NCBI GenBank assembly: GCA_977017575.1
Contig: CDRNVI010000030.1
Coordinates: 1,054,001 to 1,118,000 of the forward strand
Source: Paramoeba atlantica
Taxonomy: Eukaryota; Protista; Discosea
Length of the DNA stretch: 64,000 nucleotides
Direction: 5' to 3'
How positions within the stretch are numbered: the first letter of the stretch is position 1; each line of letters starts with the position of its first letter. A program made the translations under genes and the position numbers. The notes under the pieces were generated by a model, which searched no databases, had not been told where the DNA came from, and worked only from the letters and a program-made list of their open reading frames with translations. Of the stretch, positions 21,448-39,307 are shown one piece after another.

Positions 21448-22764
21448 TCACGTGCATATTGCGGGCGTTCGTAAGGTAATCACATAGTTGCAAACTGAAG
21501 GCTCTGATATATCCGATATTTCGGTTGTATTTCCACACACTGCACGCACGACAGTATGTCGCATAGGTCCGGACCAGCAGCTATCACCGTGTTCATACCA
21601 CATTGTTGAAAAGTCTCGCTGATACTCCTCATCTTCTTCAGCTGTACCGGCTTCACCAAAGTCAGTCCACCGACCAAGAGATATTCCGCGATCTGGCCTG
21701 TCGGGATTTTCCTGTGTGACATCGTGAAACATACAGAGTGTGTGGTTCAATCCCTTGTGAATCTTGAAGTAGCATTTTCCGTGAAGTGGGAGAAACGCAT
21801 CCTGCTCACCGAAAGGAGTGCCAAGTTCCCGTTGCAGCGTCTCAACCTCACGTTGAGTTGCCCACTTTTCGCGTAGTTGCGACTGATAGATTTCTCTAGC
21901 TACCTTGGCCTCTGGACGCTCGTATTTCGGTTTAGAATCGTACCCATAGTCATCTATTTCATCATAAATGTTGATATCATCTTTATCTCTATATCTTCTA
22001 TGCCTATCAGGAGAAATCTGGTCTTGCAAGTCATGAATGTATTCTTCATGGAAAGATGCCGCATCATGCTCCCAATCCCCAGAGACGCTTGCGTTTCTTT
22101 TTTTGCTTTCTTCCAAGGCTTCCCTTTCTTTGTCCTCCAGCATTTCCTGTTCTTTCTTTTTCATTTCGAATTCTTCAAGCTCACGCTGTTTAACGGTGTA
22201 CCGTTCTTTCGCTGCCTCAAGCTCTATCTTGCGTTCCTTCCGAATTTGCAAGGCACGCTCTATTAAGTCTCGTTTCTGTTGTAGTCCTTGACGACGGACG
22301 TCAGTCTCCTGTTGCTCTTGCGCTGCCTGAGCTGCAGCTAAAGCTGCACAATTTCGAGGACAGAACCCTTCTTGCTCATCGGAGCCGTCGCAGCAATCAC
22401 ACACACCGTCATCCACATGACTGCGAAAGATCCATTTCGCGATGTGACCCTCATTGGGACAATAGAATTCCTTTTCTGCTGCATTTACGTGACTGCATGC
22501 CGAGGTCCCAGGTTCGTCCGTTCCATCCTCACAGTCACAGTAATAATCGTTGACGTTTTGTATTGCAATGGATGTACCGTCCCCGCACAGGAAGCTTGGT
22601 CCCGAATATAAATGTCTGCGCTCGGGTGAAACTCCACGAGTTGTAGAACATTTCAAAGGAACGGGGGAGAAGACCAGAAGAGCTACAGCAAGGCAATAAA
22701 CGAAGTTCATGAGAGGAACACCTTCAGAATCGTTATTGTGCACGCATGTTCCACTTAAAGACAA
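21448..22764 (-). CDS. PRKCSH: Glucosidase II beta subunit (PRKCSH-like)
   Basis: Signal-like N-terminus; NDYYCDCEDGTDEPGTSAC; VDDGVCDCCDGSDE; coiled coil; C-terminal MRH domain (YEHGDSCWSGPMR...EPSVCNY). Likely start is at 22712. Confidence 0.92.
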   Translation of the reverse strand: MSLSGTCVHNNDSEGVPLMNFVYCLAVALLVFSPVPLKCSTTRGVSPERRHLYSGPSFLCGDGTSIAIQNVNDYYCDCEDGTDEPGTSACSHVNAAEKEFYCPNEGHIAKWIFRSHVDDGVCDCCDGSDEQEGFCPRNCAALAAAQAAQEQQETDVRRQGLQQKRDLIERALQIRKERKIELEAAKERYTVKQRELEEFEMKKKEQEMLEDKEREALEESKKRNASVSGDWEHDAASFHEEYIHDLQDQISPDRHRRYRDKDDINIYDEIDDYGYDSKPKYERPEAKVAREIYQSQLREKWATQREVETLQRELGTPFGEQDAFLPLHGKCYFKIHKGLNHTLCMFHDVTQENPDRPDRGISLGRWTDFGEAGTAEEDEEYQRDFSTMWYEHGDSCWSGPMRHTVVRAVCGNTTEISDISEPSVCNYVITLRTPAICT

Positions 22765-23072
22765 TTCGTACTAAAGCCAATCTTGTTTTGACGCATTAAT
22801 CTCCGAGGTAATACTATCACGTGTCCGTTTTCTACGATTTTAACAAACCATGTGCATCATGCACACCCTCCGATATAGATCACTAAAGACTGATTAAACA
22901 AATGGAACCCATCAAAATCATATATCTTCTATGGTTTCATCATATGAATCAATTCCAATAGGATCAACACCAGTATATCAAAATAAAAAACTCGGCTTTC
23001 TCTTCCTTTAAAACGTATTGACCCTCTATAAACAAACCTACCCCAGCACCCCCATCCTCCCTCCCTACTTAC

Positions 23073-24176
23073 CTACGTGGACAGCGGCATCAGCGGCCCC
23101 GCCTGCTGCTGGTGCAGCTGCGTCACAAAGGGGTCCCCGATATTCAGCAAAAGCTGATACAGCCACTTCCGCATGTTCACGTCCTCGTTTAGAAACTTAC
23201 TAAACGTGGTGTCCCGCAGCGGGGCGGGGAGCTGCTGCTGCAGCACCTCCCGGGCCTGGGGGTGGTCCGAGAGCCGCAGGTAGCACCGTATGATGTGGCG
23301 CAGCAGGCGGGCGGTGGGGGCGTCCGCGACCATGGTGCGGAGGGTGTTGCTGACGGCGGTGAACCGCTCGGGGGTGGCGCAGACGTACCGGAGCCCGTGG
23401 TCGGGCTGGATCATCTTCTGGAGGACGAAGGTGGCGACGGTGCGGGTGAGCTCGACGCCGCGGTCCATGGTCTTGAGGCAGAGCGGGATGAGGTCGGTGG
23501 CGAGGAGGAAGCGGATGACCTCGGGCTCGTCGGACTTCACGAGGGCGCCGAGGACGCCGAGGCTGGTGAGGCGGAGGTAGTCGAGGGCGCGGGCGGGGTG
23601 GGTGGTGGAGAGGAGGGGGTAGAGCAGCAGGGGGAGGTGGGTGCGGAGGAGGGGGGGGCGGGTGTCGGGGTGGGAGGCGACGCACTGGAGCAGGGCGAGC
23701 GCGTTGCAGACGCGGTTGGAGGCGGCGGGGGGGAGGTCGGGGGGGGTGGTGAGGAGGCGGGGGTAGACCGCGGTGAGCTCCTGGAGGAGGAGCGCGATGA
23801 CCGCGGTGGCGTGCCAGAGGGTGAGGGCGAGGTCGGGGTGGCGCTCGCGGACTTTGGAGAGTTCGTAGAGGGCGGATTCGCGGGTCTGTGGCTCGAGGAG
23901 TTGGCTGACGAGGGACCAGATTTTGGGGTCTTCGCAGGAGGAGGGAGGGGGAAGGGGAGGGGGTGGGGGTGGGGGGAGAGGACCGTGGGAGGGGGTCACG
24001 GGGGTGGGGGAGGGGTTGAGTCCGGAGAGGGGACTGACCCGGGGGACGGGGGTAGGGGGGAGAGGGGGGTGGGGAAGGGGGTGGGTGCTGGTGGGGGGAG
24101 GGTAGGGAGGACCGGGTGGGACCCCGCGGGGGTGGGGAGGAGGGGCGTGGAAAGGAGAGGTGCCGAACTGGCTCAT
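23073..24176 (-). CDS. CNOT9: CCR4-NOT subunit 9 (Rcd1/Caf40)
   Basis: RESALYELSKVRE, SNRVCNALALLQCVASH, YLRLTSLGVLGALVK, VATFVLQK and LRHIIRCYLRLSD are canonical Rcd1 motifs, preceded by a Pro-rich N-terminus. Confidence 0.96.
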   Translation of the reverse strand: MSQFGTSPFHAPPPHPRGVPPGPPYPPPTSTHPLPHPPLPPTPVPRVSPLSGLNPSPTPVTPSHGPLPPPPPPPLPPPSSCEDPKIWSLVSQLLEPQTRESALYELSKVRERHPDLALTLWHATAVIALLLQELTAVYPRLLTTPPDLPPAASNRVCNALALLQCVASHPDTRPPLLRTHLPLLLYPLLSTTHPARALDYLRLTSLGVLGALVKSDEPEVIRFLLATDLIPLCLKTMDRGVELTRTVATFVLQKMIQPDHGLRYVCATPERFTAVSNTLRTMVADAPTARLLRHIIRCYLRLSDHPQAREVLQQQLPAPLRDTTFSKFLNEDVNMRKWLYQLLLNIGDPFVTQLHQQQAGPLMPLST

Positions 24177-24447
24177 GGAGATGCGAGTCGGTGGGTGATG
24201 TAGTAAGAAAATCCGATGGAAAGAAAGAGAGATAGAGGTAAAGATATAGGGGTAAAGAAGTGAGACTGCGAAACGATTATTTTTGAGAGTATAATGAGTG
24301 CGAAAAATAGTTTTTATCTCTTATATCTTGAGAGAGAACTTCATGCCCAATACAGCCTGACGGTATAAAAGCAGGATCATGTAACGATAGAAAAAAATAG
24401 AATCGTAGAATAGACCGCCCCATATATTATTTATCACCTGATTTCCC

Positions 24448-25741: not shown

Positions 25742-28700
25742 CTATCCTGCGAAGCTACGATCAGAAATATGCGCCGCCTCTTCGTCTTCTGTATCGTCAT
25801 AAATCAGAGGTCCGATTGCACTGTTCACAGCATCTCGCACTTGCTTGGCTTCCATCTCAAGGCCTTTCTTGTGATGCTCGAAAGCAACATTTTTCGCCAG
25901 ATTTTGTTTGTTTTCTTTCTTACTTACGCTTCTCGGTGAGCCACAGAATGGACACGAAGTACTTGGAAGCGTACTTGCGGCGCGCTCGAACGTATCACAG
26001 AGCATCGGTAGTAAGCCGAACGTCCGGAGCTGGAGTCCCAGACTACGGCGTACCGGTTCATCCTCCTTGGAGGCTTTGCGAAACACTGAGAACAAGCCTC
26101 GAATATCAGGATAAAGTTCAATCGGTCGCGTTACCACTTCCACTGTTGCGTTCTCTTCTGAAACCTTAAAGAATGTATCTAAAGAGTACGGTGCCGCGGC
26201 ACGGTGCAGAAGTTCGAGCATTGCCCAACAGATATTTGCCCGCATACAAATCGCCAAAAGTGCGCCTGAGCGCACAAATGCTTGCAAATAGGTTTCATTA
26301 GCCGCACAACATTGTGAGACCAGTCGTGTCATGCAGCGCAAATGGGAGCAGTGTGTGTCAGTGTACAGGATGTGCGTAACCATCGCGATCATGTGGGAGT
26401 CCTGCATGAAGGAGCGTGTCAGATTCTCGTCTGTTTGCATCATGAAACGAAGGGGATCCACCGCCAAATGCCACTGGCGTCGTGTTGGGACATACCAACA
26501 GGCCAGATTTAGCAGAAGTAGATCTTCCGAATGAGCCACCTTGATCAAGGGTGTGTTGTGATACTTCGTCAACGTGAGCAAAGTCGAAAACAGCATGTTC
26601 GCGGCACGTCCTTCGGAAGCCGTAAGTGGAGCCACTCCTAACTGAAAAGGCGTATGACGCGGGAGGATAGAGAAAATTTGCTGTAGGATACCATACTTCA
26701 GGACACGTTGCACATGCCCGCACAGTAGTGCACGACACAAAATACCCGTTACGGCCTCGATACATTCCAGTTGGTTTTTCTGGGGGAGAGCATTGAAAAT
26801 ATATTGCACGCCATCTAATAAAACTTTGAAGTGCTCCCATTTAACGTCCTCCACCGTGTTCGTCTCACGAGGTGTTTCACTAGTGGCTGTGCGAGATTGT
26901 CGAGTACGGATCATGTAGTAAAGTAGCAGCATGAGCCACCAGATGGCATCGTACTGTCGACGCGAAACTAGCTTGGTACCTGTCGTTATGAACACGTCTA
27001 GCTCATCAAGACACAATCGACGATAAAGTTCAGCGAGATCACGCGGGTAGCATTGCCGTGAAAGTTCGGCAAAATCTCCACAACACCCTCTATAAATGAG
27101 AGGCCAGAGCCGAGTGTCGTTTTCCGCCATACAGCGAAAGTGCGCAGCAACCTTTGCAACAACGTAATTGGCGTTCTTCGGAGCAAAATAGCCTAAAATG
27201 CAGAGACAATCGCCAAGTAAATTTACATGCTTAATACTTCGATCTTGTAGCAGGTCCATAATCTTCTCAAAGATAAAGTCATATGAAGACGGTAATGGTC
27301 TGATGGACTGCGTTTCGTTTTCGGGGTGACTTTGATCCAAAATATAGAGAATACGACACGTGGCCTGAGCCATTACCTCGGGGTCAAATGCGGAACTGTC
27401 GAGAAATGTGACGCAAGTTCGAATCGCAGTTAGACTCGCTTGACTTACCAGCTGATTGCACCTACTCTTGACCAATTTACTACTCGGGTCTACCTCCAAC
27501 GCTCGTCGGTGAGCATCGCTTGCGGCATGCCATTTTCCGAGAAGTCGTAGACATTCACCAAGACAAAGATGAGCTCGAGCCCATTGTGGGGCGAGAACGA
27601 CGCAAGCAGTAGCATCTTCGTGGGCTTTCTTATGTTTCTCCAAGCGTAGATACGCAATGGCGCGATTATAGTACAGCGATGCTAACTGTGGCTCCGCCTG
27701 TATGCCGCTTGAATAACACTGTATACTGCGATTGTAATCGCCTGACTGAAAAGCCTCGTTTCCCTTGCGCTTCCATTCCGATGCAGTCGCAGGTTTGCTT
27801 TTCGACTTTCCTGTGGTCTCAATTTGTTCTTCAGAATCGGTAAGTGACAGATCAAGATTGCTCGATATTTCCGCATCTTCCACAGTGGTCTCTTCAGTGT
27901 CAATATGACAGGAGCATCCCTTCGAATCATGTCGTCCAGAAGACCACAATTCCATAGACGCAACAAGTTCATCGGTGACTGGTGACCTAAGAAGCCACTC
28001 CGTCTCGGCGCTCGTTAGATCCAGAGCTCGACGGCCTTGAGCGGAGGAACGTATACCTTTTTTGTTCCCTTTGTTTTTGCGAATATCAAGCATGACAGTC
28101 AGATCATCGCCGATGTCAAGACTGGGACGCGCTTTCTTAGTCTTTGTCTTACTCTCTTTTGTACCACAGAGTAGTTCTATCTGCTCGGCTGATGTGTCCT
28201 GTCGCGCATTTCGATCTGCGTTGCGTCCCTTGTCGGTCTGTGACACTGTCCGATTCGATTTCGTTTCAGATGTTTCGGTCTTTTTCTCCTTGCGCGCGGA
28301 TAAATCAGTAGCAATTGTTCCCTTTTCTTTCACTCCACTTGACGAGGAAACTTGCGTCTCATTCTTTGGTGAAAAAGTGGGTGTCTTTTTGCTTTTTTCT
28401 GGTTCGGGAATGTTGTCGATTTCCCCATTAATGTGAGTTCGCTTATTTATGTGAATGAATTGGGGAACGGACTCGTTATTGATTCCAATTATTTTTTCTA
28501 ATTCACCCTTCGACATGCCGAATTGCATAGCAAAGTAATCCATCCTCTTCTGTAGCCTACGCATAACTTTACAATGATACACTCCATGCTCTTCTCCACA
28601 ACATAAGCAATAATGAAATCCGGCTGTTCGGTGGCGCTCCTGCTGGTTACAATTATTCTCAGAATTGTTGTAATACAAGCAAGGGTAGCGGTGTGTATGC

Positions 28701-31700
28701 TTAATTTTTTGCCATCCTAGTTTGGGTGCTTTTGTGAAGCGCACCCAGTGAGCTGCAGTAAGAATTGCCCACAAATGTGGAATATTGCGGATAGTGGTTT
28801 TTTCCCAGTGTGTAACAAGAAGATCTTGGACACATTCGCGAACATCTCCATTCGATGTGAGATACCATAAGCTATTTAAATCCTCTTCATCTGCAACGTA
28901 CGATCGGTAAAACAGATCTCGAGAAATTTCTGTTGCGGTGGGATCCCGACTACCCGCAGTACTACGTACACTAGTTTTTGAAGTGGATACGTTAATCGTC
29001 TGCTGCGAGCCACTGGATGAACCATTCTCGTTGGATGCAGAAACATGGTTCGGCGTACTAGTGATAGAAGCTCGCTTCGGCGGTGGTGGTGTACGTAGAT
29101 GAATTGCATTCGGAAGTTTCGGAGTGCGTTGCATTCCAACGAACTGTGAAAGCTGGTGTTCTGATATAGACAGTACGCGGGACAGACTTTTTACGCGACG
29201 CGAAATCTCTCGCAACTCTGGGCAGGCGCATGCACCGTGATCTCGAAGTAGACAACAAAGGCAAAAGTGAAACCCCGCCTCTCGATGAGCAGTTACCTTC
29301 TTACACAAATTTTCCTTGGAGTTATAGTACAGACAAGGACTTGTTGAGTTCTTGTCAGAAGATTTCTGCCATACTAAGCCTCTTATTCCCGATCCGCGTG
29401 CTGACGCTAATAGGGCCCAAAAATAAGGCAATGTGAGTGCCGTACGAGACCAATGATTTGACCACATGTCCTCGGCGCTCGTTCGAACGGCACCTTCGCT
29501 ACACAAATGCCATACGTCACTTAAGTAGATGTCACTTACGATCCATTCTTTGAAGAATTCGTTTCTAGAAATACGGCCTTCGTCCATTTTGAGGTCTTTA
29601 ATACCGGTAACGGAGCTCACATCGTCTAGCAACCTAAGATTCGGATCGTCATCAGTTTTCTTAGTTGTCGGTAATTCAACTTTACCCGGAATAGTAAGCT
29701 CGTCTATGGGATCAGGCGAAAGTGATGCTTCTAGACCATCGGAGTTACCTATGATTGTTCTCATCGGAGATTTAATCGAAGTTTGCGGGTGTTTAACCGG
29801 AAGAACAATTATTTGAGGCGGAGTCAAACGTGTAAATCCCATGAACTTTTGAAGCACCTCAAGATCAACTTCTAGGGTAACAGCAAGCTCCCGAATTCGA
29901 GATTGTAAGCGCTGGAGTGCTAAGCAATTTGACGCTCCGTGTTCTTCAGCACCGCAGCACAAGCAAAAATGAAATCCAGCAGTACCGTGCTTAGCATTTT
30001 GCTTGCATCCGCCAACGGCATGATTATAAAACAAGCAAGGTGTGTGCTGTGTCCTTTTTGCGACATGCCAGACCAAAGACCGAGTAGACGTGTGGGCGGC
30101 ATTTCTACCCGAGCGACAACCGTGTGATGCTGCAAGAAGAGCCCAAAAAAAGGAAGCCGATACTGATATTTGAGCCCAGTGATTGTCAGAAAGGTCTATC
30201 GCACGGGTCCGGATAAGTTCCTGTGAACCCATGTACCATAAATCTCGCATAGTTTCATCTGAGCAGTCTACATAGGTTTGATAAAAATCCTTCTTTGTAA
30301 GCTGCAAACCTGTTTCAGAGCGAGAAAATGCTTTGCTAGGTGAGGTGGCGTGATCTCCCGGGCGTGTCCAAGGTACAGATTTGCGTAAACCGCTCTGTTG
30401 GGCTTCCACCTGGGGAGTAAGACGTTCGGGTGGTGAACGAACGTCATGAATGCTGATTATTTCCCGATCCGGGGTGAACGATGCTCGCTCGTTTGAAGGA
30501 ATGGGGGAGTCAGCTTCGAACGTTTGAAATTCGTTTAAAAATTGCATGGAGTCAAGCAAGGATCCTTGTATTGGGGTAGTCGTAGGCTCAGCAATCCGAA
30601 GCTTTTCAAAGACTGTATCTACACCCGAAGGATTCTCTAGATTCAGGGCATCTTCGGGCCCCGCATCTATATTAAATCCAAACATGGGACGACGCAGCAA
30701 AGAATTCGGCGATTCTGGTTCATCTTCAGTATTTTTTGAACGCATACTTTCTAGTAAAGGCTGCAGGACATTTGTTACGTCCTTTTGGAGAGAAGCTTCA
30801 TCGTGTTGCTCCAAATCTTGCGGATTCATCAACTTTGAAGCAATGGGGTCACTTATAGCCGCGTTTTTGAGACGAGCGCTGGCTTTCAAGCCTTGATGGG
30901 ATTCAAATGGTAGGACTGCATGTCCCTTATGAAATTTCTGTGTGTGTCCCCCGGTAGAACTGGAAGGTAGATTGGGGTGGTAAGGTGTGGCTAATGGGTT
31001 ATACATATTCGAGCGCATGCTGAAGTCGGAAGATCCGTGGGGTGCCGAAATGTTGCGGGGTATCATTTCCAAAGGGTTAGCTGGATGTCCCATGAACTGG
31101 CCGCCATCATGCATCGGTAATTCATTCATACCTGGAAGCGGTGGTGAAAATATGTCCTCATTGTACTGGGGGGGCATGGCCGGATTTGAGCCTTGTGGAT
31201 ATGAAGCCCACGGAGGTGGCATTAGATGGGAAACAGTATCACGAAACAGCCGTCGGAGTTGGGAAATAGTGAACGCTGGAGATTTCAAGCGATAAAAATT
31301 TCTCTCGAAGCAGTCATAGAGCCATATGACACCCGGCGTAGCCCAATATTCTTTATCAGTTGGAGTAATTTCTTCTACACTTTTGGGCTTGTACGTGGTC
31401 CCCGGTTTGGACAGTGACAAGGCGTGTTCTTCAAACAGAAACTTTGAGGAGTAAAATTCATAGAATTGAACTAGAATCTCAAGTGTTGAGCTTACTTCGC
31501 TTTGTAGCTGATAACTCAGTCGCAAAAGCTCCAGTTGCAACGAGAGCTTATGAAATTCATCTAATGCAACTTGCGGAGGAACGAATTGAACCAAATTCTT
31601 ACGCGTCTGACAAACAAAATATGTCCACATCTTCATGATAACTTCGGATCGTAAGCTTGACTTACGGCACGTGAAGAATTCCATTGAATGAGCGAGCTTT

Positions 31701-32275
31701 AAAAGAACTCGAGCGCCCAAGTAAATCATTGGATGTTGTGTGAAGTATAATCTGTGGAGAACAGCTTCAAACACATCTGTCCCACCGAACTTAAGATTAA
31801 AATTGATGTTCGTGTATCTACTCGTTTGATCTACCCGAGAGGGATGCATGCCTTTGGCACGGTACTGAATGCAGTCGTTCCTTTGACTCTCGGTGCCGCG
31901 ACAAAGTAAAATCGTTCCTTTCTCTGAGAGAGACAAAGTAGAAAAATACCGACTAAACTGTACCGCATCGATTTCTGCTGACATTCGTAGCCTAGATTTA
32001 GATCCCATTTGAGATGCCAATGTTTGATCTTCCGGGGATAATGCCGTTAGTTCAAGTGGAGAAGTTGGATCCCAATATCCAAGAGCTAGAGATTGACCTG
32101 AAATGTACACGTTGCGCCGAACTGAGAGACCCGCATTTTTCACATGAGCTTGGATGTCATCTTTCACTTCACATGCCATTTTCCATATCGCAGCGACTGA
32201 TGAAAGTTTGGCTACTGTGAGAATGGTTTTGTGAAGTCGCTCTCGCTGGCTCCCGTCCAACACATAAGGTTGCAT
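25742..32275 (-). CDS. 2177-aa protein: three copies of an unrecognised Cys/His-rich module, three TPRs and a helical C-terminus
   Basis: Uninterrupted ORF. TPRs ASEWKRKGNEAFQSGDY...YYNRAIAYL...ALEVDP at ~27480-27790. Modules at ~29835-30290, ~29135-29575 and ~28480-28925. Confidence 0.9.
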   Translation of the reverse strand: MQPYVLDGSQRERLHKTILTVAKLSSVAAIWKMACEVKDDIQAHVKNAGLSVRRNVYISGQSLALGYWDPTSPLELTALSPEDQTLASQMGSKSRLRMSAEIDAVQFSRYFSTLSLSEKGTILLCRGTESQRNDCIQYRAKGMHPSRVDQTSRYTNINFNLKFGGTDVFEAVLHRLYFTQHPMIYLGARVLLKLAHSMEFFTCRKSSLRSEVIMKMWTYFVCQTRKNLVQFVPPQVALDEFHKLSLQLELLRLSYQLQSEVSSTLEILVQFYEFYSSKFLFEEHALSLSKPGTTYKPKSVEEITPTDKEYWATPGVIWLYDCFERNFYRLKSPAFTISQLRRLFRDTVSHLMPPPWASYPQGSNPAMPPQYNEDIFSPPLPGMNELPMHDGGQFMGHPANPLEMIPRNISAPHGSSDFSMRSNMYNPLATPYHPNLPSSSTGGHTQKFHKGHAVLPFESHQGLKASARLKNAAISDPIASKLMNPQDLEQHDEASLQKDVTNVLQPLLESMRSKNTEDEPESPNSLLRRPMFGFNIDAGPEDALNLENPSGVDTVFEKLRIAEPTTTPIQGSLLDSMQFLNEFQTFEADSPIPSNERASFTPDREIISIHDVRSPPERLTPQVEAQQSGLRKSVPWTRPGDHATSPSKAFSRSETGLQLTKKDFYQTYVDCSDETMRDLWYMGSQELIRTRAIDLSDNHWAQISVSASFFWALLAASHGCRSGRNAAHTSTRSLVWHVAKRTQHTPCLFYNHAVGGCKQNAKHGTAGFHFCLCCGAEEHGASNCLALQRLQSRIRELAVTLEVDLEVLQKFMGFTRLTPPQIIVLPVKHPQTSIKSPMRTIIGNSDGLEASLSPDPIDELTIPGKVELPTTKKTDDDPNLRLLDDVSSVTGIKDLKMDEGRISRNEFFKEWIVSDIYLSDVWHLCSEGAVRTSAEDMWSNHWSRTALTLPYFWALLASARGSGIRGLVWQKSSDKNSTSPCLYYNSKENLCKKVTAHREAGFHFCLCCLLRDHGACACPELREISRRVKSLSRVLSISEHQLSQFVGMQRTPKLPNAIHLRTPPPPKRASITSTPNHVSASNENGSSSGSQQTINVSTSKTSVRSTAGSRDPTATEISRDLFYRSYVADEEDLNSLWYLTSNGDVRECVQDLLVTHWEKTTIRNIPHLWAILTAAHWVRFTKAPKLGWQKIKHTHRYPCLYYNNSENNCNQQERHRTAGFHYCLCCGEEHGVYHCKVMRRLQKRMDYFAMQFGMSKGELEKIIGINNESVPQFIHINKRTHINGEIDNIPEPEKSKKTPTFSPKNETQVSSSSGVKEKGTIATDLSARKEKKTETSETKSNRTVSQTDKGRNADRNARQDTSAEQIELLCGTKESKTKTKKARPSLDIGDDLTVMLDIRKNKGNKKGIRSSAQGRRALDLTSAETEWLLRSPVTDELVASMELWSSGRHDSKGCSCHIDTEETTVEDAEISSNLDLSLTDSEEQIETTGKSKSKPATASEWKRKGNEAFQSGDYNRSIQCYSSGIQAEPQLASLYYNRAIAYLRLEKHKKAHEDATACVVLAPQWARAHLCLGECLRLLGKWHAASDAHRRALEVDPSSKLVKSRCNQLVSQASLTAIRTCVTFLDSSAFDPEVMAQATCRILYILDQSHPENETQSIRPLPSSYDFIFEKIMDLLQDRSIKHVNLLGDCLCILGYFAPKNANYVVAKVAAHFRCMAENDTRLWPLIYRGCCGDFAELSRQCYPRDLAELYRRLCLDELDVFITTGTKLVSRRQYDAIWWLMLLLYYMIRTRQSRTATSETPRETNTVEDVKWEHFKVLLDGVQYIFNALPQKNQLECIEAVTGILCRALLCGHVQRVLKYGILQQIFSILPRHTPFQLGVAPLTASEGRAANMLFSTLLTLTKYHNTPLIKVAHSEDLLLLNLACWYVPTRRQWHLAVDPLRFMMQTDENLTRSFMQDSHMIAMVTHILYTDTHCSHLRCMTRLVSQCCAANETYLQAFVRSGALLAICMRANICWAMLELLHRAAAPYSLDTFFKVSEENATVEVVTRPIELYPDIRGLFSVFRKASKEDEPVRRSLGLQLRTFGLLPMLCDTFERAASTLPSTSCPFCGSPRSVSKKENKQNLAKNVAFEHHKKGLEMEAKQVRDAVNSAIGPLIYDDTEDEEAAHISDRSFAG

Positions 32276-33211
32276 TAGCTTGACGTTACTTGGACACTAC
32301 GTCAAAAAGGAAATAACAAACAACCTAAATTGAAATGAAATATGTTGTGTACGACAAATTAGCTACTCTACTGAGTACGTTATTCACATTCAAAAAAGAA
32401 ACAGATGAAGTGGTTTAAGTTTACGCTCTAATACGTTGAAAATGTATTCACCCTGTGGTGTACATTTGTCAATGAAGTAAATTACCGGAGCAGGATGGAG
32501 CTATTATTGCCTTCACTATTATGTAATTAATTCAATTAATAAAATTGCTCTTTCAGCGGCTATCATTCACGTAAATACATCTGGACTATCGACACAGTAC
32601 TATAGTATCTGCATCGACTAGACAAAAGTGGTACACTATAATCATAAAAGGTTGAACCTAACCGAAGTTACACTCTCCTTCACCAGAAAAATATACAATA
32701 ACTTCTTTTCTCAAAAAATAAAATGTGTACGAAATCATACGTACATACATGTACGTAATATGCATGTACGTAGAATATATTTGTGCATTGGAGCAACGCT
32801 CTACGCCACTCCAGAGATAACTGAAATCCGATAGGAAAAAACTGAGAGACAGTGAATTCACAATGTGTTTAAATATTTCATATAAAACATTTACTTAAAA
32901 CAAGCAATGCCATTTTACGATCTACTCATTATTCCGGGAATAAATCAAATGCAATGGTTAGTATCAATATGTGCGGTGAGTAGAAAATATCCGCAGTGTT
33001 AATTTTGTTGACTTTACGCTGCAAAACGTAATTTTGTACTCCATTGGGAAAGATGATCCCCCCGGTTTCAATACAACATCTCTTCGTTAAGAGAACATAT
33101 TTCCATTTTACCTCTCTCTTTGTTCGTGTAGAAATCTTTTGAAGGAATAATACGGTATACTTTTGTATACCGTATACCCCCCAGCGTACAAGTAAAGTTT
33201 AAACAGCCGCA

Positions 33212-36200
33212 TTACAGCATATGATACAATACGAGTAGAACGAAAACGCATACTGTAATGCAAAACACCATATAGGGGATGTTTCCGAACAAACGTAAGT
33301 GATCATGAAGTCCGATAAGGAGTGATGCAAAAGCTTCATGTAGTAAATCAGAATATGACTTGCTGTGTATTTTACTGAAAGGAGATGTCGCTTTCTCCTG
33401 TGAGTGGCGATTTATTTGTTTCTGATGAATATGTGAAACCTGATTTGCTTTTTCGTCGACAATATCTGAAGTTGTTCGTTTGTGAGCAGTTTCGCTCTGC
33501 TCAAAGCTTTCCATTGCTTCGCAGACCATAGGAGTCTTGAATTCTTCAGTGTCGTTTAGAGATTCCGCATACCGCTTCTGTTCTAAAGAGCTTAAATCGC
33601 GACGAATTGACTCTAGATCCTGCTGCTTGCGGAGATGCGAATCTTTCGATATTTGAAAACTCTTTTCTAGAATTTGAAAGTGCGCTTGATCCTCCGAATT
33701 TGAAAATTCATCTAGCTTTAGAATACTCTGCGCACGCTCATATTGTTGACGATGAAGCTCATGTTGTGCGAAGGCTAGTCGCTCTTCATCATAGGCCCTG
33801 TCCAACGCTTCTTGTTTGTGAACAACGTCATGTTCGAAAGCATAGAATGAGTTATCCTCTGAAGTACCATTTGATGTATTCAACACTTCATTCAAAGTTG
33901 GGTCTACTCCTCCTTGAGCAGCAGGGACTGCCAAACTTTTCTGCGCCGCAGTGTTGGAAGTGGAACGGGACCGAGAGTACTCCGTATTGTTAAGGTCTCG
34001 AATGTAAAATACTGAGCGTGATGGAGGGCCTGTAATGCCTAATAGTCGATCAAATCCATCACGCGTGAGGCCGAACTGTTGCGAAAAGTGGATAAGCCTC
34101 TTTTCCAATCTTTTTAGATTTCGACAAGTTCGGGCTCCATGATCAGTTTCGCCGCAACACAAACAAAAATGAAAACCCGCCGGGACGTGCCTTTCCGAAA
34201 GAGCACACATGTTGTCAGCCTTGTTGAAATAGAGGCAAGGGTAGCCTTGAGGATGCTTACGACGTTGCCAATTGAATGTGTGTGGCTTTAAAAACCTTAC
34301 CCAATGCGCTGCAGTTAATATGGCCCATAGACGAGGCACGTCTCGAAACGACGTCTTGTACCAATGACGTGTCATTACCGTCTCAGCGCAACTTTGAGCA
34401 TCATCACTAGAGGTCACAAACCAAAGACTGCGAAGATCATCTTCCGAAGTCACAAACACGTCGTAAAATCGAGTTCTAGAAATCGAAATCACTTTTTGGA
34501 CTTCATCTAACATAAAATTTCTGCGAAAAGATGATTCATCACTTTCTTCGCCCGCACCTGAATCATCACTAATAGTATTCTTTGATGTCGATGGTGTTAT
34601 GTCGGCATTCCTTTTTGTCACTGCTATCGTAACAGAGATAGAAAAACGATCATTTATTTTTTCCGTCCCAAAGATTTCCGCTACAGCGGCTACCGATGTT
34701 CCCAGATCGTGCGCGAATTGTTGTATTGCACTCCGCAAGCCTTTCATTGTGGAACAGTTTGCCGCATCGTGGTGAGAATGCCCACAGCAAAGACAAAAAT
34801 GTTTATTCTGAATATGTTGAACATTCTTGTTAACACAGTTTCCCGTGTTGTAAGCGAAGCAAGGAGTTTCTGATATGGAGTAGTCCAATTTCACCCAAAA
34901 CGGCGTAACAACAGACTCTGTCCATACAGCAGCCAGGAGGGTCCAAAAGAACGGCATAGATGACGGACATTCTCTTAACAATGCGAAAGCCTTCTTTCTC
35001 AATCTCGAATTGTTCCCCATTTTCCAAATATCGCGCAATTTTAAGTTTGATGCAACAAAATTTTGGTAGATGTCTTGTTTAGAGGCAGTTAGTCGAGTTT
35101 TCGAAAGTGAAGGATGTTTATCCATATCTTTCATAAGAAAAACATCTCGAAATCTGTTTAACGGTGTAAGGCGAGAAGCCGGAGAGCATGATCTCGTGCG
35201 CGCTGAAGGCTGTGCCCGATGATTTTCTACGCTCTCAGATGATGACACATTATTAATCACCTGGCTTTTAGTATTTCCGTGCGCGTGAAGTGGCATGGCA
35301 GTTTCGTTTAATAGCACCACGATTGTTGGAGGAGGTTCACTTTCTTGCAACCCGAAGAATTGCATGAGAGTCTCTTCAGATACTTTCAAAAGGACCCCTA
35401 AGTCACGCAGAAGACGTTCCAATTTGTTTAGACTTGGACAAATATGAGCACCGTGATCACCACGGCCACAGCACAAACAAAAATGAAAGCCCTGTGTTTC
35501 GTGATCTTCGTTGCGGTTGCACTTATACTTCTCCAGATTGAAGAATAAACACGGACTCTGGTGAATCTTTTTGACGAGCTGCCACGTAAATAATTCTTGA
35601 ATGTTCGACCTTCCTTTAGTACGGTGCATAGTGGTGAGCAGAGCCCAGTGAAATGGTGCTTGTAGTCCTGTCAGAGACCAGTGATGAGTCACACGTGTCA
35701 TGGCTCGTGATCGGATGGATTCGTTAGATCCCATGCTCCATAGCTCCACAAGCGTTGCGTCTCCATGTTCAATGAAAGTGTGATAGAAATCATCATGTTG
35801 CATCGTGACCCGGGGATACACGGCTTCTAAGGTATCATCCTTACGAATTTCATGTGGCAATACTTTTTCTTCGAGATGTACCGCCTTATGGGCCATATCA
35901 TTGTACATTTCGCCTTGATGTTCCAGGAAATTTTCATCCAATATATACATTTCTTTCTGGGCATTGGTAGACATTTCGATCGCAGTTGGTACGATTTCCT
36001 GCTTCGCTGGAGACGATATAAAAGCAAATGGTTTGTTTTCATGACGAGTGTGTGGCTCAGTGACGTCATCAGGAAGAAGTTCCAGCCAAGAACCAGCAAT
36101 GTGACTCGCAAGCGAGATCGTGTCCGGGGATGGCGGCACCAAGTGTACTTTTAAAAACGGAGAATTACTCAAGGGTCGTTTTTCATGAAACTCAGAGTGA

Positions 36201-37189
36201 TTGGCATCACTCTCAAGAAATTCAGAGTATCCCGTACCTTGTTTCCGGAATTCTGAAGATGTGTACATTGCGAGATCCCGAAACTCGTCCACATTGGTTG
36301 CATTCATTTCATCGTGAATTCTATCTCCTTGTGAGGGTATGTACCGATTTCGATTTCTTCTACGTTGGGCGTTTGCAGTTTCGTACGGCATCGGTGTGCC
36401 TTCCAGACGTGCATTGCTTTCGGCTTCCTGATTTTCTAGTGCATAGTACTCACCATAGGGCGCACTAGCGGAATTTTCAAATCCGGGTGTCATACCGCGA
36501 CGAGCTCGAAACACTCTTCCTGCGTCATATTCTGACGTAGATGGGGGGTACGGAACACGACGACCTCGCATCATCGAGCCATGAAGAGAGCCACGATGGA
36601 CAGGTGAAATCGAAACGTCAGGTGAAATCGGAGGAGGGAGAGGGTAAGGAACATCCATCGGGTGGCCCATTCCCCCGCGGTCCATTCGTCCGCGCGTGTT
36701 CCTGCCACGGCGAGAAAAGTGGGGGACCGGGTCGCGTCCTAGAGCGCCTGGCATGGGGTACCCGTGCTCGGTAAATCCTGGCGGGGGATAAAACGACGGG
36801 GGGACAAGACCGTAGGGTCCACTGTCAGGGTGCTGTGGGGAGGGTAGAAAAGGGGGAAGAAAGTCGGAGTCGTGCTCCATTTCCGGAGCAAAGGGCATGC
36901 CACCACCGCGTTGAGTCCTGCGGGAAATCCTACCCTCTCGAGGGCGCGAGTGTGTCAGTCGTTGTGGCCCACTTCGAGAGGTATGTCTGTCACCCCGACG
37001 TCTCGGCTCAGGTCGATCGGAATCGTGTTGCCTGTCACTGGGAATCTCGGTGTGTGGTTCTTTTGCAAGGTCCTTCGATGTAACACGTTTAAGAACCCGT
37101 ATGGGTGGAGTGCGTTCCTCAGGCCGCTTCGCAGAGCCCGTCATGTCGGCGCAAGTTAATTCTTTGTGACTGGGGCTTTCTGAGGTCAT
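33212..37189 (-). CDS. 1325-aa paralog: Pro/Arg-rich disordered N-terminus, three copies of the same module, coiled coil and predicted C-terminal tail anchor
   Basis: Uninterrupted ORF. Modules at ~35340-35790, ~34665-35080 and ~34035-34480. Ends in hydrophobic YMVFCITVCVFVLLVLYHML. Confidence 0.88.
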   Translation of the reverse strand: MTSESPSHKELTCADMTGSAKRPEERTPPIRVLKRVTSKDLAKEPHTEIPSDRQHDSDRPEPRRRGDRHTSRSGPQRLTHSRPREGRISRRTQRGGGMPFAPEMEHDSDFLPPFLPSPQHPDSGPYGLVPPSFYPPPGFTEHGYPMPGALGRDPVPHFSRRGRNTRGRMDRGGMGHPMDVPYPLPPPISPDVSISPVHRGSLHGSMMRGRRVPYPPSTSEYDAGRVFRARRGMTPGFENSASAPYGEYYALENQEAESNARLEGTPMPYETANAQRRRNRNRYIPSQGDRIHDEMNATNVDEFRDLAMYTSSEFRKQGTGYSEFLESDANHSEFHEKRPLSNSPFLKVHLVPPSPDTISLASHIAGSWLELLPDDVTEPHTRHENKPFAFISSPAKQEIVPTAIEMSTNAQKEMYILDENFLEHQGEMYNDMAHKAVHLEEKVLPHEIRKDDTLEAVYPRVTMQHDDFYHTFIEHGDATLVELWSMGSNESIRSRAMTRVTHHWSLTGLQAPFHWALLTTMHRTKGRSNIQELFTWQLVKKIHQSPCLFFNLEKYKCNRNEDHETQGFHFCLCCGRGDHGAHICPSLNKLERLLRDLGVLLKVSEETLMQFFGLQESEPPPTIVVLLNETAMPLHAHGNTKSQVINNVSSSESVENHRAQPSARTRSCSPASRLTPLNRFRDVFLMKDMDKHPSLSKTRLTASKQDIYQNFVASNLKLRDIWKMGNNSRLRKKAFALLRECPSSMPFFWTLLAAVWTESVVTPFWVKLDYSISETPCFAYNTGNCVNKNVQHIQNKHFCLCCGHSHHDAANCSTMKGLRSAIQQFAHDLGTSVAAVAEIFGTEKINDRFSISVTIAVTKRNADITPSTSKNTISDDSGAGEESDESSFRRNFMLDEVQKVISISRTRFYDVFVTSEDDLRSLWFVTSSDDAQSCAETVMTRHWYKTSFRDVPRLWAILTAAHWVRFLKPHTFNWQRRKHPQGYPCLYFNKADNMCALSERHVPAGFHFCLCCGETDHGARTCRNLKRLEKRLIHFSQQFGLTRDGFDRLLGITGPPSRSVFYIRDLNNTEYSRSRSTSNTAAQKSLAVPAAQGGVDPTLNEVLNTSNGTSEDNSFYAFEHDVVHKQEALDRAYDEERLAFAQHELHRQQYERAQSILKLDEFSNSEDQAHFQILEKSFQISKDSHLRKQQDLESIRRDLSSLEQKRYAESLNDTEEFKTPMVCEAMESFEQSETAHKRTTSDIVDEKANQVSHIHQKQINRHSQEKATSPFSKIHSKSYSDLLHEAFASLLIGLHDHLRLFGNIPYMVFCITVCVFVLLVLYHML

Positions 37190-38435
37190 GACATAAAATC
37201 ACCGATACGCGTAAAGATTCTGATAAGAAACTAGAACACAAAAGGCAAATTATTGATAGAAGAATATGTTTTGATAACTTTTGCATGTCTATGTGCATGC
37301 GTGTAATACAACGTGCGTGCATGTATATCAATAGTGCATCTTACAAAAAGGTAGGACATTTCGTGATGCGCAACAGGAAGAATAGAGAACACATAAATTT
37401 CATAAATAGAGAACAACTGAAAACTCGCTGATAAGACACTTTTTCCTATACACCCCCATATAACGATCATATCGATCGTGCAAATCCGTTTAATCAAGAT
37501 AATGTGAAAACACAAACATGCGCTAACGTTACGAAGCTAGAAAATACACAGCAAGAAAGAATAGCAAACCTAAATAGTTCATATAGGAAAACTAGAGAGG
37601 AATGTGGCGCGAGATTAAAGCCCTACGAAAGAAAAATCAGACTCAAAAGATATAAGGTTGAGAGCGAGTGATACGAAATGCAAAAAATAACACAACTACT
37701 CACAAAAGTGACGGTGTTGCATAAAAAGTGCGAGACGTGCAATATAGCTTATATTGGCTTTCGCAATATAACATCGGAAAAGGTCTGTATAACATCGAAA
37801 AAAAATGGAAGTATCGAGGCTCGTTGAGAACCAAATCAAACAATCGAGTAACGAAATAACTCACTCCAGAAAAAGAAAGTGCATAGAATAGACGTTTAAA
37901 AAATATGGTTCATAGAAAACTATAGCAAACTGGGAGAACATTTAACTTTTTTATACGAAATCGAAATTTATAAAAAATTAGCAGAATTATTATAAAAAAT
38001 TGTAAGAAAACCGCCTCGACTCGAAAACCATCTTTGAGATAAACAAATTTGGAGAGCCGAATTTAAGGACCACACAATCAAGAACTTGCTACTCAAAATA
38101 ACATAAAGTTCATAACACCTTATTGAAAGGCTAAATCATTTACTTAACCCCATACTCTTAAAATTCCGTCACACACAACAGACGACATGCGTACCTTATC
38201 TAGCTGACCCTTTCAATCTTCTCCACGTCACGTTGTTCTATCCTGCTTTATCTCTCCTTCCAAACTTCCTCCAAACTCCTTTCTTTCTCAAACACAAGAT
38301 TTACATCGTAGACCCAAAAAAACCCTGAGGCAAAGTCCCATCCTAAACCCCAATTTAAAACGACCCTACTACCATAGTACTGTACTCGTCAATACAATAC
38401 CCCCTTTGTCCCCCCCACCCCCTCTCCCCCCCGCC

Positions 38436-39116
38436 TCACCCCCGGGACTGCACCATCAGCGTCGCCCCGTCCTCCGTCATGTGCCCGTTCATCTCCGCCA
38501 CCGCCGCGTCGGCCTCCGCCTTGGAGGCGTAGTGCACGAAGGCGTACCGCCCCCGGGCGGGGTTGCGCCCCTCCCGCGGGCCGTCCACCCGGGTGACCGC
38601 CCCGAACGGCGCGAACAGCCCGTGCACGGTGCTCTCCGACATCGCGTGCGGGAGGCCCGCGACGTAGACCGTCGTGGGGTCGGGGTCCGAGGCCCGGGGG
38701 CGCTTGTTGTAGCCGTAGTCCACGGCCCCGGGGTAGGGGGCGGGGCTGCCCCCGGGGTAGGGGGGCGGGGGAACGGCACGGGGGTAGGGGGAGGGGAGGG
38801 GAGCCCCCCGGGGGAGGGCGGGGGTGGCGGGGATACTTTGTGCCATCATGCGGTCGTCCAGTTCGACGGGGCTTACGGTGACGGTGAGGGGGGTGTTGAC
38901 GAAGCCCACGCAGTAGGGTTGGTTGGAGAGGAATTGGAGTACCCGGGAGGCGTTCTCGATGCGGTCGAATCGGGCGTAGCCGGTGCATCCGACGCCTGTG
39001 GGACTGGGTAGCAGGGCGGCGTTGACGAAACCGTTGGCGAAACGAAAGAAGGTGGAGAATTCACGGGGGGTGATGTCAACGGGTAAGCCGGTAACGACGA
39101 GGGTGGCAGAAGCCAT
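38436..39116 (-). CDS. RNA-binding protein with two RRM domains (first RRM RBPMS-like)
   Basis: RRM1 TLVVTGLP...TGYARF; RRM2 TVYVAGLP...RYAFVHY, with RNP2/RNP1 motifs; Pro/Tyr-rich linker. Confidence 0.9.
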   Translation of the reverse strand: MASATLVVTGLPVDITPREFSTFFRFANGFVNAALLPSPTGVGCTGYARFDRIENASRVLQFLSNQPYCVGFVNTPLTVTVSPVELDDRMMAQSIPATPALPRGAPLPSPYPRAVPPPPYPGGSPAPYPGAVDYGYNKRPRASDPDPTTVYVAGLPHAMSESTVHGLFAPFGAVTRVDGPREGRNPARGRYAFVHYASKAEADAAVAEMNGHMTEDGATLMVQSRG

Positions 39117-39307
39117 GTAGACGGAGTGATAAAGGTAGAAAAGTGCGTAGAAGTTTGTAAAGTTTATGAGTTTGGATGAAAAGAGTCGAATAAAGATGAA
39201 GGGTAAAATCCAATTATGAGGTGAAGCACAATTATGAGTGAATTCATCCGAAATACGATGATATTCTGGTATTCCGGAAAGATTGAGCTCCGTCGTACGT
39301 GGTCTTG

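What the first reader, a model, noticed from the sequence alone, without database searches (positions are those of the whole stretch)
28480..35790. Unrecognised ~150-aa Cys/His module repeated three times in each of two adjacent genes
Seen: six copies share F[YF]xx[FYW][VI]...[LVI]W...W[AT][LI]L...W...PC[LF]x[YF]N-x3-5-C-x5-6-H-x3-5-H[FY]CLCC-x3-4-H-x4-C followed by two amphipathic helices; HW is present in five of six. Repeat 1 resembles repeat 1 across the genes (GS[QN]E.IR.RA), and repeat 3 matches repeat 3 (LWAILTAAHWVRF identical). The three-module cassette was therefore duplicated as a unit and then joined to different ends. Inference: a tandem zinc-binding unit loosely like the CCCH-plus-CCHC finger of DIRS/Ngaro retroelement ORF1, embedded in a helical domain and possibly RNA-binding. 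I do not recognise it as a named family. This is the best candidate for an undescribed system in the window.
Basis: partly seen in the sequence, partly recalled or inferred. Interest (0 to 1): 0.82.

Follow-up and report, generated by a model that had tools for sequence, protein, structure and literature searches.

The report
Unannotated two-zinc Cys/His module, tripled twice
Two neighbouring genes of a trypanosome-like protist each carry three copies of a ~150-residue Cys/His domain that matches no described protein family or known fold, and its few relatives are joined to membrane anchors, protein kinases and an RNA helicase, so it looks like a new, rare binding domain whose function is still open.

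Summary
Two intronless minus-strand ORFs, A (25742-32275, 2177 aa) and B (33212-37189, 1325 aa), each contain three ~150-aa modules. Each module matches a profile of the six at E 1e-55 to 1e-68.

A profile read against 1.84 billion representative proteins found about 16 true relatives:
- Single-module, tail-anchored Perkinsela proteins at the same syntenic position as B.
- Neobodo and unnamed protist proteins where the module precedes a protein kinase or a UPF1-like helicase.

Across 22 copies the invariant columns are one Trp plus Cys and His residues. They fit eight ligands, CCHH then CCHC, enough for two zinc ions.

The tree and one collinear A-B alignment support duplication of the three-module cassette as a unit. 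B is the orthologue of the Perkinsela gene. A is a chimera with a catalytically degenerate RET1-like nucleotidyltransferase domain and an Hsp70/90-type TPR.

RNA binding is my favoured function, but it is inferred. Protein binding is a serious rival. I could not test zinc-ligand clustering in 3D because model coordinates are not exposed. The scan's notes hold nothing on this module elsewhere.

The parts
25742..32275 (-). Gene A, 2177-aa intronless ORF: degenerate nucleotidyltransferase domain, three modules, TPR, helical C-terminal region
31376..32275 (-). A residues 1-300: RET1/Cid1-like nucleotidyltransferase fold with the catalytic Asp positions replaced (P/E and N)
   Evidence: PDB 5hzd at E 1.1e-7, with the alignment shown. 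Weak PAP_assoc hit.
29825..30301 (-). Module A1 (A residues 659-817)
29123..29572 (-). Module A2 (A residues 902-1051)
28472..28927 (-). Module A3 (A residues 1117-1268); this is the copy that was modelled
27473..27784 (-). A residues 1498-1601: three TPR repeats of the Hop/RPAP3/CHIP/PP5 type
   Evidence: Pfam TPR_1 at 7e-15. PDB hits to Hop and RPAP3 at about 1e-28.
25745..27472 (-). A residues 1602-2177: C-terminal region with no family match and no paralogue in the genome
33212..37189 (-). Gene B, 1325-aa intronless ORF: low-complexity R/G/P-rich N-terminus, three modules, acidic helical stretch, C-terminal membrane anchor
36122..36163 (-). B residues 343-356: short motif SPFLKV..PPSP, shared with the Perkinsela orthologues
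35339..35803 (-). Module B1 (B residues 463-617)
34655..35086 (-). Module B2 (B residues 702-845), the most diverged copy
34025..34483 (-). Module B3 (B residues 903-1055)
33215..33283 (-). B residues 1303-1325: hydrophobic C-terminal segment, read as a tail anchor (Kyte-Doolittle 19-residue mean 2.63)
   Evidence: The same feature is present in P0004-P0007.

Best explanation
The six copies are members of a real, previously unannotated domain family. Each module has four N-terminal helices, an irregular Cys/His region and two C-terminal helices. In the wider family the Cys/His region reads C-x7-11-C-x1-6-H-x3-9-H-x-C-x2-C-x3-4-H-x4-17-C. That gives eight ligands, CCHH then CCHC, which I infer hold two zinc ions. 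In the window's copies the second half has the spacing of a retroviral-type zinc knuckle.

Gene B is the positional orthologue of a single-module, tail-anchored protein of Perkinsela. Its module was expanded to three. Alternatively, Perkinsela lost two.

Gene A arose when the three-module cassette was duplicated in tandem and fused to three other parts: a RET1-like nucleotidyltransferase domain lacking the catalytic aspartates, an Hsp70/Hsp90-type TPR, and a helical C-terminal region.

The most likely function, which is inferred and not shown, is recognition of RNA or single-stranded nucleic acid. Three modules in a row would give avidity. B would hold its ligand at a membrane surface. A would bring it to a chaperone-linked scaffold. 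Distant relatives would hand it to a kinase or a UPF1-like helicase.
For: The family is real:
- HMM E-values for the six copies are 1e-55 to 1e-68.
- An exhaustive profile search of 1.84 billion representatives gave 23 hits, about 16 of them full-length modules.
- In a 22-copy alignment the only invariant columns are W, four Cys, one His and one Cys, with N and one more His nearly invariant. A further His lies between the second Cys and that His in nearly all copies.

Confident model, no known neighbour:
- pLDDT 92.5, pTM 0.87.
- Foldseek against PDB: nothing below E 3.7.
- ESM Atlas: TM 0.40 or less.
- Pfam and PDB sequence searches: no hit.

Orthology of B:
- Gene order is collinear with two Perkinsela-type genomes: EamA, rhodanese, MCM, SRAP, DUF1796, RRM, module gene, Rcd1, then NMD3 and SNF2.
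- B and the Perkinsela proteins share the SP[FL]LKV..PPSP motif and a C-terminal hydrophobic anchor.
- A3, B3 and the Perkinsela modules form a clade with 97/97 support.

Cassette duplication:
- One collinear HSP over all three modules, E 8e-104.
- Within-gene monophyly is rejected.

Lean towards RNA:
- C-x2-C-x4-H-x4-C spacing in five of six copies.
- Weak, non-significant profile matches to NCp7 and MPE1 knuckles.
- Fusion partners are a TUTase-like domain and a UPF1-like helicase carrying two modules.
- Net charge is positive in five of six modules.
Against: - No direct evidence of zinc or RNA binding.
- The 3D clustering of the Cys/His residues was not checked, because the tools return no coordinates.
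- The commonest fusion partner among distant members is a protein kinase (P0010, P0014, P0015, P0019, and P0012 next to one). That says nothing about RNA.
- Net charge is modest (-1 to +7).
- Most of the module is a helical scaffold, as in protein-binding zinc domains.
- In distant members the last His-Cys spacing is 7-17 residues, so the knuckle-like spacing is not a family trait.
- No Pfam zf-CCHC or zf-CCCH match.
- Transcription is not shown. The only possibly-RNA run is a guess and gives short contigs.
Confidence: 0.5

Rival explanations
1. The module is a zinc-stabilised protein-protein interaction domain, in the way the UPF1 CH domain, LIM domains or RING-like domains are. It would recruit a common partner to membranes (B and the Perkinsela proteins), to kinases, to a helicase and to the chaperone-linked scaffold of A.
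For: - Kinase fusions are the commonest architecture among distant members.
- In P0026 the module occupies the N-terminal position before a UPF1-like helicase. From general knowledge, UPF1 itself has a protein-binding Cys/His domain there.
- The module is mostly a helical bundle with only a small Cys/His region.
- Net charge is modest.
Against: - No structural or sequence similarity to CH, LIM or RING domains.
- The knuckle-like spacing, and the conserved aromatic residues beside the first and fifth ligands (PCLYYN, GFHFC), are features common in RNA-binding fingers. This is established knowledge, not tested here.
- No partner is known.
Confidence: 0.3
2. The module is a domesticated piece of a retroelement Gag, with a helical capsid-like part plus a nucleocapsid zinc knuckle. 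This is in line with the first reader's DIRS/Ngaro ORF1 comparison.
For: - The layout is a helical domain followed by a C-x2-C-x4-H-x4-C motif.
- The language-model search lists low-scoring clusters carrying zf-CCHC or Retrotrans_gag (0.76-0.78, below the level the tool calls reliable).
- The scan's notes say the genome carries tyrosine-recombinase retroelements with Gag.
Against: - The module profile finds only the two genes and their 99.9% identical second copy in the whole 45.7-Mb genome. All 27 candidates were scored.
- No capsid or nucleocapsid structure matches the model.
- B's gene sits in conserved synteny with Perkinsela.
- No Pfam Gag or knuckle hit.
Confidence: 0.07
3. The Cys/His residues do not bind metal. 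The module would be a purely helical repeat with conserved cysteines for another reason, such as redox sensing or disulfides. Alternatively, the ORFs are not expressed genes.
For: Metal binding and transcription are both untested here.
Against: - Eight Cys/His positions are kept across 22 copies at 21-49% identity, while almost nothing else is invariant.
- The proteins are cytosolic-type and have no signal peptide region.
- Both ORFs are very long, open and intact on both assembled copies.
- B has syntenic orthologues. A carries significant TPR and nucleotidyltransferase domains.
Confidence: 0.05

Closest known systems
Retroviral-type zinc knuckle (Pfam zf-CCHC, PF00098)
   Same: The second half of the Cys/His region reads C-x2-C-G-x3-H-G-x3-C in five of the six window copies. 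That is the C-x2-C-x4-H-x4-C spacing. The module profile gives faint matches to HIV-1 NCp7 and yeast Mpe1 knuckles (E 1.4-10).
   Different: - No Pfam match even at E 10.
- In distant family members the His-Cys spacing is 7-17 residues.
- The motif is embedded in a ~150-aa helical domain and fused directly to a preceding CCHH site.
- The sub-model has no structural match.
CCCH zinc finger (Pfam zf-CCCH, PF00642)
   Same: The first half starts like a CCCH finger: PC[LF][YF][YF]N, then a second Cys 7-11 residues on, then a ligand 5-6 residues later. Aromatic residues follow the first Cys.
   Different: The third and fourth ligands are His-x5-His in the window's copies, so the site is CCHH and not C-x5-C-x3-H. 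There is no Pfam match.
Perkinsela sp. CCAP 1560/4 KNH05566.1 and its kin (P0004-P0007)
   Same: These are true homologues (E 1e-23 to 1e-26 in the library search). They lie at the same position between an RRM gene and Rcd1/CAF40. They share the upstream SP[FL]LKV..PPSP motif and the C-terminal anchor with gene B.
   Different: They carry one module, not three, and are 496-555 aa against 1325 aa. The only name on record, 'aminodeoxychorismate lyase', has no support: no Pfam domain is recorded for the protein.
UPF1 CH domain and the kinetoplastid KKT2/KKT3 central zinc domain
   Same: Both are Cys/His-rich, multi-zinc domains attached to a helicase or a kinase. Distant members of this family are attached to the same kinds of partner (PMC8178753 came up, title and abstract only).
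Trypanosoma brucei RET1 terminal uridylyltransferase (PDB 5hzd); applies to the N-terminus of gene A only
   Same: Residues 54-298 of A align to the RET1 catalytic and PAP-associated regions (E 1.1e-7).
   Different: The metal-binding aspartates are replaced. RET1 ADIDF aligns to SPLEL, and RET1 DFDLS aligns to NFNLK, the position mutated to Ala in the 5ido entry. A is probably not an active transferase.

Membership tests
zf-CCHC zinc knuckle (PF00098) | C-x2-C-x4-H-x4-C spacing | tested here: met
   Five of the six window copies have it; A3 has x3 before His. The spacing is not kept in distant family members.
zf-CCHC zinc knuckle (PF00098) | Match to the Pfam model at or above its gathering score | tested here: not met
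   No zf-CCHC hit for any of the 22 module copies at E up to 1-10, nor for the whole proteins.
zf-CCCH (PF00642) | C-x7-8-C-x5-C-x3-H ligand pattern and a match to the model | tested here: not met
   The pattern is C-x7-9-C-x5-6-H-x5-H in the window copies. No Pfam hit.
DIRS/Ngaro retroelement ORF1 (Gag-like) | Sequence similarity to the Gag/ORF1 of such elements; occurrence within elements | tested here: inconclusive
   No reference ORF1 sequence was at hand. The module profile finds nothing in this genome outside the two genes and their second copy, although the scan's notes report such elements here.
Any family with a solved structure | Fold similarity of a confident model | tested here: not met
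Two-zinc Cys/His domain (generic) | Eight conserved ligands that cluster into two tetrahedral sites | tested here: inconclusive
   Conservation of the eight positions is met. The spatial clustering could not be tested because model coordinates are not exposed.
Cid1/RET1-type nucleotidyltransferase (gene A N-terminus) | Fold homology plus the catalytic Asp triad | tested here: not met
   Homology is met (5hzd, E 1.1e-7). The aligned Asp positions read P, E and N.
Hop/RPAP3-type TPR (gene A residues 1498-1601) | Three TPR repeats that match the Pfam TPR models | tested here: met
   TPR_1 at 7e-15 and 54.5 bits against a cutoff of 27.8. PDB hits to Hop and RPAP3 at about 1e-28. The carboxylate-clamp residues were not examined.
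Tail-anchored membrane protein (gene B) | A single hydrophobic segment at the extreme C-terminus and no N-terminal signal | tested here: met
   Kyte-Doolittle 19-residue mean of 2.63 at residues 1307-1325, the last residues of the protein. The four Perkinsela-type orthologues have the same feature. Which membrane it targets is unknown.

The most novel reading that the evidence does not exclude
The module is a new protein fold that binds two zinc ions and is confined to kinetoplastids and a few unnamed protists. It acts as an RNA-recognition unit and has been wired repeatedly to different effectors: a membrane anchor, protein kinases, a UPF1-like helicase, and a dead TUTase with a chaperone-binding TPR. 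That would make it a lineage-specific counterpart of RRM or CCCH domains in organisms that regulate genes almost wholly after transcription.
Probability: 0.35. Interest if true: 0.65.

Novelty: new variant of a known kind. Interest (0 to 1): 0.55.

Why it matters
Kinetoplastids control gene expression almost entirely after transcription (established knowledge), so new nucleic-acid-binding or adaptor domains in this group are of direct interest.

This is a domain with a confident predicted structure that matches nothing solved or described. It has only about 16 representatives among 1.84 billion proteins, and it appears in four or five different architectures. That makes it a clean target for Pfam curation and structure determination.

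It also corrects a misleading public name, the Perkinsela 'aminodeoxychorismate lyase'. And it gives a worked example of domain-array growth and gene chimerism in an early-branching kinetoplastid lineage.

The limits are plain. The family is rare, absent from the studied trypanosomatids as far as this profile can see, and its function is unproven.

Tried and rejected
- **Pfam.** Scans of the whole proteins, the six modules and all 22 family copies gave nothing for the module.
- **PDB sequence profile search.** Only chance-level rows: trypanosome triosephosphate isomerase at E 0.2-0.3, and knuckles at E 1-10.
- **Word-index protein searches.** B's module region found only the window's own two proteins. 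A 22-row alignment headed by the full-length Perkinsela protein found only three already-known Perkinsela-type proteins. Neither widened the family. Both are length-limited, so they say little.
- **Language-model Atlas search.** Best score 0.83, below the tool's reliability level.
- **Bodo saltans.** The gene beside Rcd1 (647 aa) does not carry the module, so there is no syntenic orthologue there.
- **Retroelement origin.** No other copy in the genome.
- **UPF1 CH domain and KKT2/3 central domain.** No sequence or fold match.
- **Paralogues of A's own N- and C-terminal parts.** None apart from the second assembled copy and a distant 1006-aa TUTase-like ORF.
- **Public runs.** Three runs hold the locus almost completely. 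One 2015 run is guessed to be RNA and gives short contigs over B and about 420 nt past its stop codon. The tool cannot tell whether it is RNA, so expression is not shown.
- **Literature.** No paper mentions KNH05566, and a kinetoplastid / 'novel zinc-binding domain' / protein kinase search gave no paper holding that phrase. The earlier Perkinsela plus 'zinc finger' search turned up only the KKT2/KKT3 central zinc domain.
Full report
**What is there**

The window is a one-strand gene array. Nearly all ORFs of 200 aa or more lie on the minus strand, close-packed and without introns. The best matches of its Rcd1/CAF40 protein are the free-living prokinetoplastid PhM-4 (68% identity) and Perkinsela (63-65%). 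The organism is therefore a kinetoplastid near Prokinetoplastina. The scan's notes call the genome kinetoplastid-like.

Two adjacent ORFs hold the finding:
- A: 25742-32275, 2177 aa.
- B: 33212-37189, 1325 aa.

The same locus is assembled a second time on another contig at 99.9% identity, most simply the other haplotype.

**Observation**

A pattern for the Cys/His core hits exactly six times, three per gene. With limits set by alignment, the modules are 144-159 aa long. Sixteen columns are invariant across the six, and pairwise identity is 21-43%. Each copy matches the six-copy HMM at E 1e-55 to 1e-68.

**Not a described family**

- Pfam gives no hit to the module at E up to 10. This holds for the whole proteins, the six modules and 22 family copies.
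- A profile search of PDB sequences gives only chance-level rows, with HIV NCp7 and Mpe1 zinc knuckles at E 1.4-10.
- AlphaFold2 on a 22-row alignment gives a confident model: pLDDT 92.5, pTM 0.87, with all five models at 86 or above. It has four helices, an irregular Cys/His region with two short helices, then two more helices.
- The Cys/His region folded alone (pLDDT 82.7) also matches nothing.
- A language-model search gives 0.83 or less.

The tools warn that missing matches do not prove a new fold, and I keep that caveat.

**Relatives**

HMMER read all 1.84 billion representative proteins with the six-copy profile and found 23 hits. After domain inspection about 16 carry the whole module. 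The rest are short Cys-rich repeats in plant and other proteins.

The true members are:
- P0003: 389 aa, from a metagenome, E 5e-47.
- P0004-P0007: four Perkinsela-type proteins of 496-555 aa. One is KNH05566.1, named 'aminodeoxychorismate lyase' in its record with no domain to support that name. Another comes from a Paramoeba aestuarina transcriptome.
- A more distant set: Neobodo designis P0014 and the unnamed P0010, P0015 and P0019, where one or two modules precede a protein kinase.
- P0012, whose gene ends 15 nt before a kinase gene on a one-strand scaffold.
- P0026, where two modules precede a helicase whose best solved relative is human UPF1 (E 1.8e-34).
- Small stand-alone proteins P0013, P0021 and P0022.

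**The ligand pattern**

In the 22-copy alignment the invariant columns are one Trp, four Cys, one His and one Cys. One Asn and one further His are nearly invariant. Reading the rows, nearly every copy also has a His or Cys between the second Cys and that His.

The family pattern is C-x7-11-C-x1-6-H-x3-9-H-x-C-x2-C-x3-4-H-x4-17-C. That is eight ligands, CCHH then CCHC, enough for two zinc ions. The middle Cys of CLCC is special to the prokinetoplastid copies.

In five of the six window copies the second half has exactly the C-x2-C-x4-H-x4-C spacing of a zinc knuckle, but that spacing is not kept in the distant members. I could not test whether the eight residues cluster in space.

**History of the two genes**

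Gene order around B is collinear with two Perkinsela-type genomes: EamA transporter, rhodanese, MCM, a roughly 800-aa protein, SRAP, DUF1796, RRM protein, module protein, Rcd1, and later NMD3 and the SNF2/PARP-finger/RING protein.

B sits where the Perkinsela single-module gene sits. It shares with that gene an upstream SP[FL]LKV..PPSP motif and a hydrophobic segment at the very C-terminus. B is therefore the orthologue. Gene A and a 323-aa ORF are extra relative to Perkinsela. Bodo saltans has no module gene beside Rcd1.

In a maximum-likelihood tree:
- A3, B3 and the Perkinsela modules form a clade (97/97), with P0003 next to it (93/94).
- A1 pairs with B1 (75/76).
- An A2+B2 pair is not rejected (p 0.15).
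- Holding the three modules of either gene together is rejected (p-AU 0.001 and 3e-10).

One BLASTP alignment runs collinearly from B 461-1052 to A 657-1265, linkers included (31% identity, E 8e-104). Module 3 is the ancestral one. The tree cannot say whether Perkinsela lost two modules and gene A, or this lineage gained them; the relevant branch has 61/17 support.

**The different ends**

Gene A:
- It begins with a domain homologous to the T. brucei RET1 uridylyltransferase (5hzd, E 1.1e-7). The aspartates that hold the catalytic metals are replaced: ADIDF aligns to SPLEL, and DFDLS aligns to NFNLK, the latter being the position mutated in the inactive 5ido entry. It is probably a pseudo-enzyme.
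- After the modules come three TPR repeats of the Hop/RPAP3/CHIP/PP5 kind.
- The last 575 aa or so have no match and no paralogue.

Gene B:
- It has a low-complexity N-terminus with Arg/Gly/Pro-rich stretches.
- After the modules comes an acidic, probably coiled stretch, and then the tail anchor.

**How it most likely works**

Shown:
- A conserved Cys/His pattern.
- A confident helical-plus-Cys/His model.
- The architectures and the synteny.

Inferred:
- Two structural zinc ions.
- Function. I lean to RNA or single-strand nucleic-acid recognition (about 0.5). The reasons are the knuckle-like and CCCH-like motifs with flanking aromatics, the two RNA-enzyme partners (the TUTase-like domain and the UPF1-like helicase) and the mostly positive net charge. 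Triplication would raise avidity.
- Roles. B would hold the ligand on a membrane, and A would link it to a chaperone-binding scaffold.

The main rival (about 0.3) is a protein-binding zinc domain, favoured by the frequent kinase fusions and the largely helical body. A retroelement Gag origin is weak (about 0.07), because the profile finds no other copy in the 45.7-Mb genome and no capsid or nucleocapsid fold matches.

**Expression**

Three DNA-type runs hold the locus nearly completely. A 2015 run guessed to be RNA gives short contigs over most of B and about 420 nt beyond its stop codon. The tool cannot confirm that it is RNA, so transcription is not shown.

**Verdict**

This is a real, rare and so far undescribed Cys/His domain family. 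The duplication history is well supported, the predicted fold has no neighbour, and the function is unproven. I rate it a new variant of a known kind (Cys/His zinc modules) rather than categorically new, with interest 0.55.

Noticed in passing
window 31376-32275 (minus strand), gene A residues 1-300: A RET1/Cid1-like nucleotidyltransferase domain whose three metal-binding Asp positions read P, E and N. It is a probable pseudo-TUTase, fused to zinc modules and an Hsp70/90-type TPR. I know of no described counterpart with this architecture.
   Followed up: partly
window 52397-53644 and 53608-54801 (minus strand): The MCM gene is split into two overlapping ORFs: MCM_OB in one, the P-loop and lid in the other. 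The Perkinsela-type orthologue is a single 825-aa protein. This could be a frameshift, an assembly error or a real break.
   Followed up: no
window 36058-36116: One contig of run X5 (a different sample of the same organism label) skips 57 nt in frame, inside the low-complexity N-terminal region of gene B. This looks like a length variant between strains or alleles.
   Followed up: no
G000 contig C3:486998-500058 against window 25742-37303: The whole A-B locus is assembled twice, on contigs C30 and C3, at 99.88-99.97% identity with 1-4 differences per 3.4 kb. The second copy is most simply the other haplotype.
   Followed up: partly
window 22001-24000 (Rcd1 and the end of PRKCSH) and 38001-40000: GC content rises locally to 0.54-0.56 against about 0.39-0.47 in the neighbouring 2-kb windows, with positive GC skew at 22-24 kb. 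A 313-aa antisense ORF (23262-24203, plus strand) lies over Rcd1 and is probably a by-product of the GC-rich stretch. This may relate to the intragenic GC islands noted elsewhere in this genome.
   Followed up: no
L013:10001-11668 (Perkinsela sp. CCAP 1560/4, KNH05566.1): The public name 'Aminodeoxychorismate lyase' for this protein has no supporting domain on record. The protein is a single-module, tail-anchored member of the family described here.
   Followed up: partly
L019:10001-12969 (metagenome scaffold): A 251-aa module protein (P0012) ends 15 nt before a 732-aa protein kinase gene on the same strand. Together they may be one module-kinase gene, split by a frameshift or by the gene caller.
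   Followed up: no
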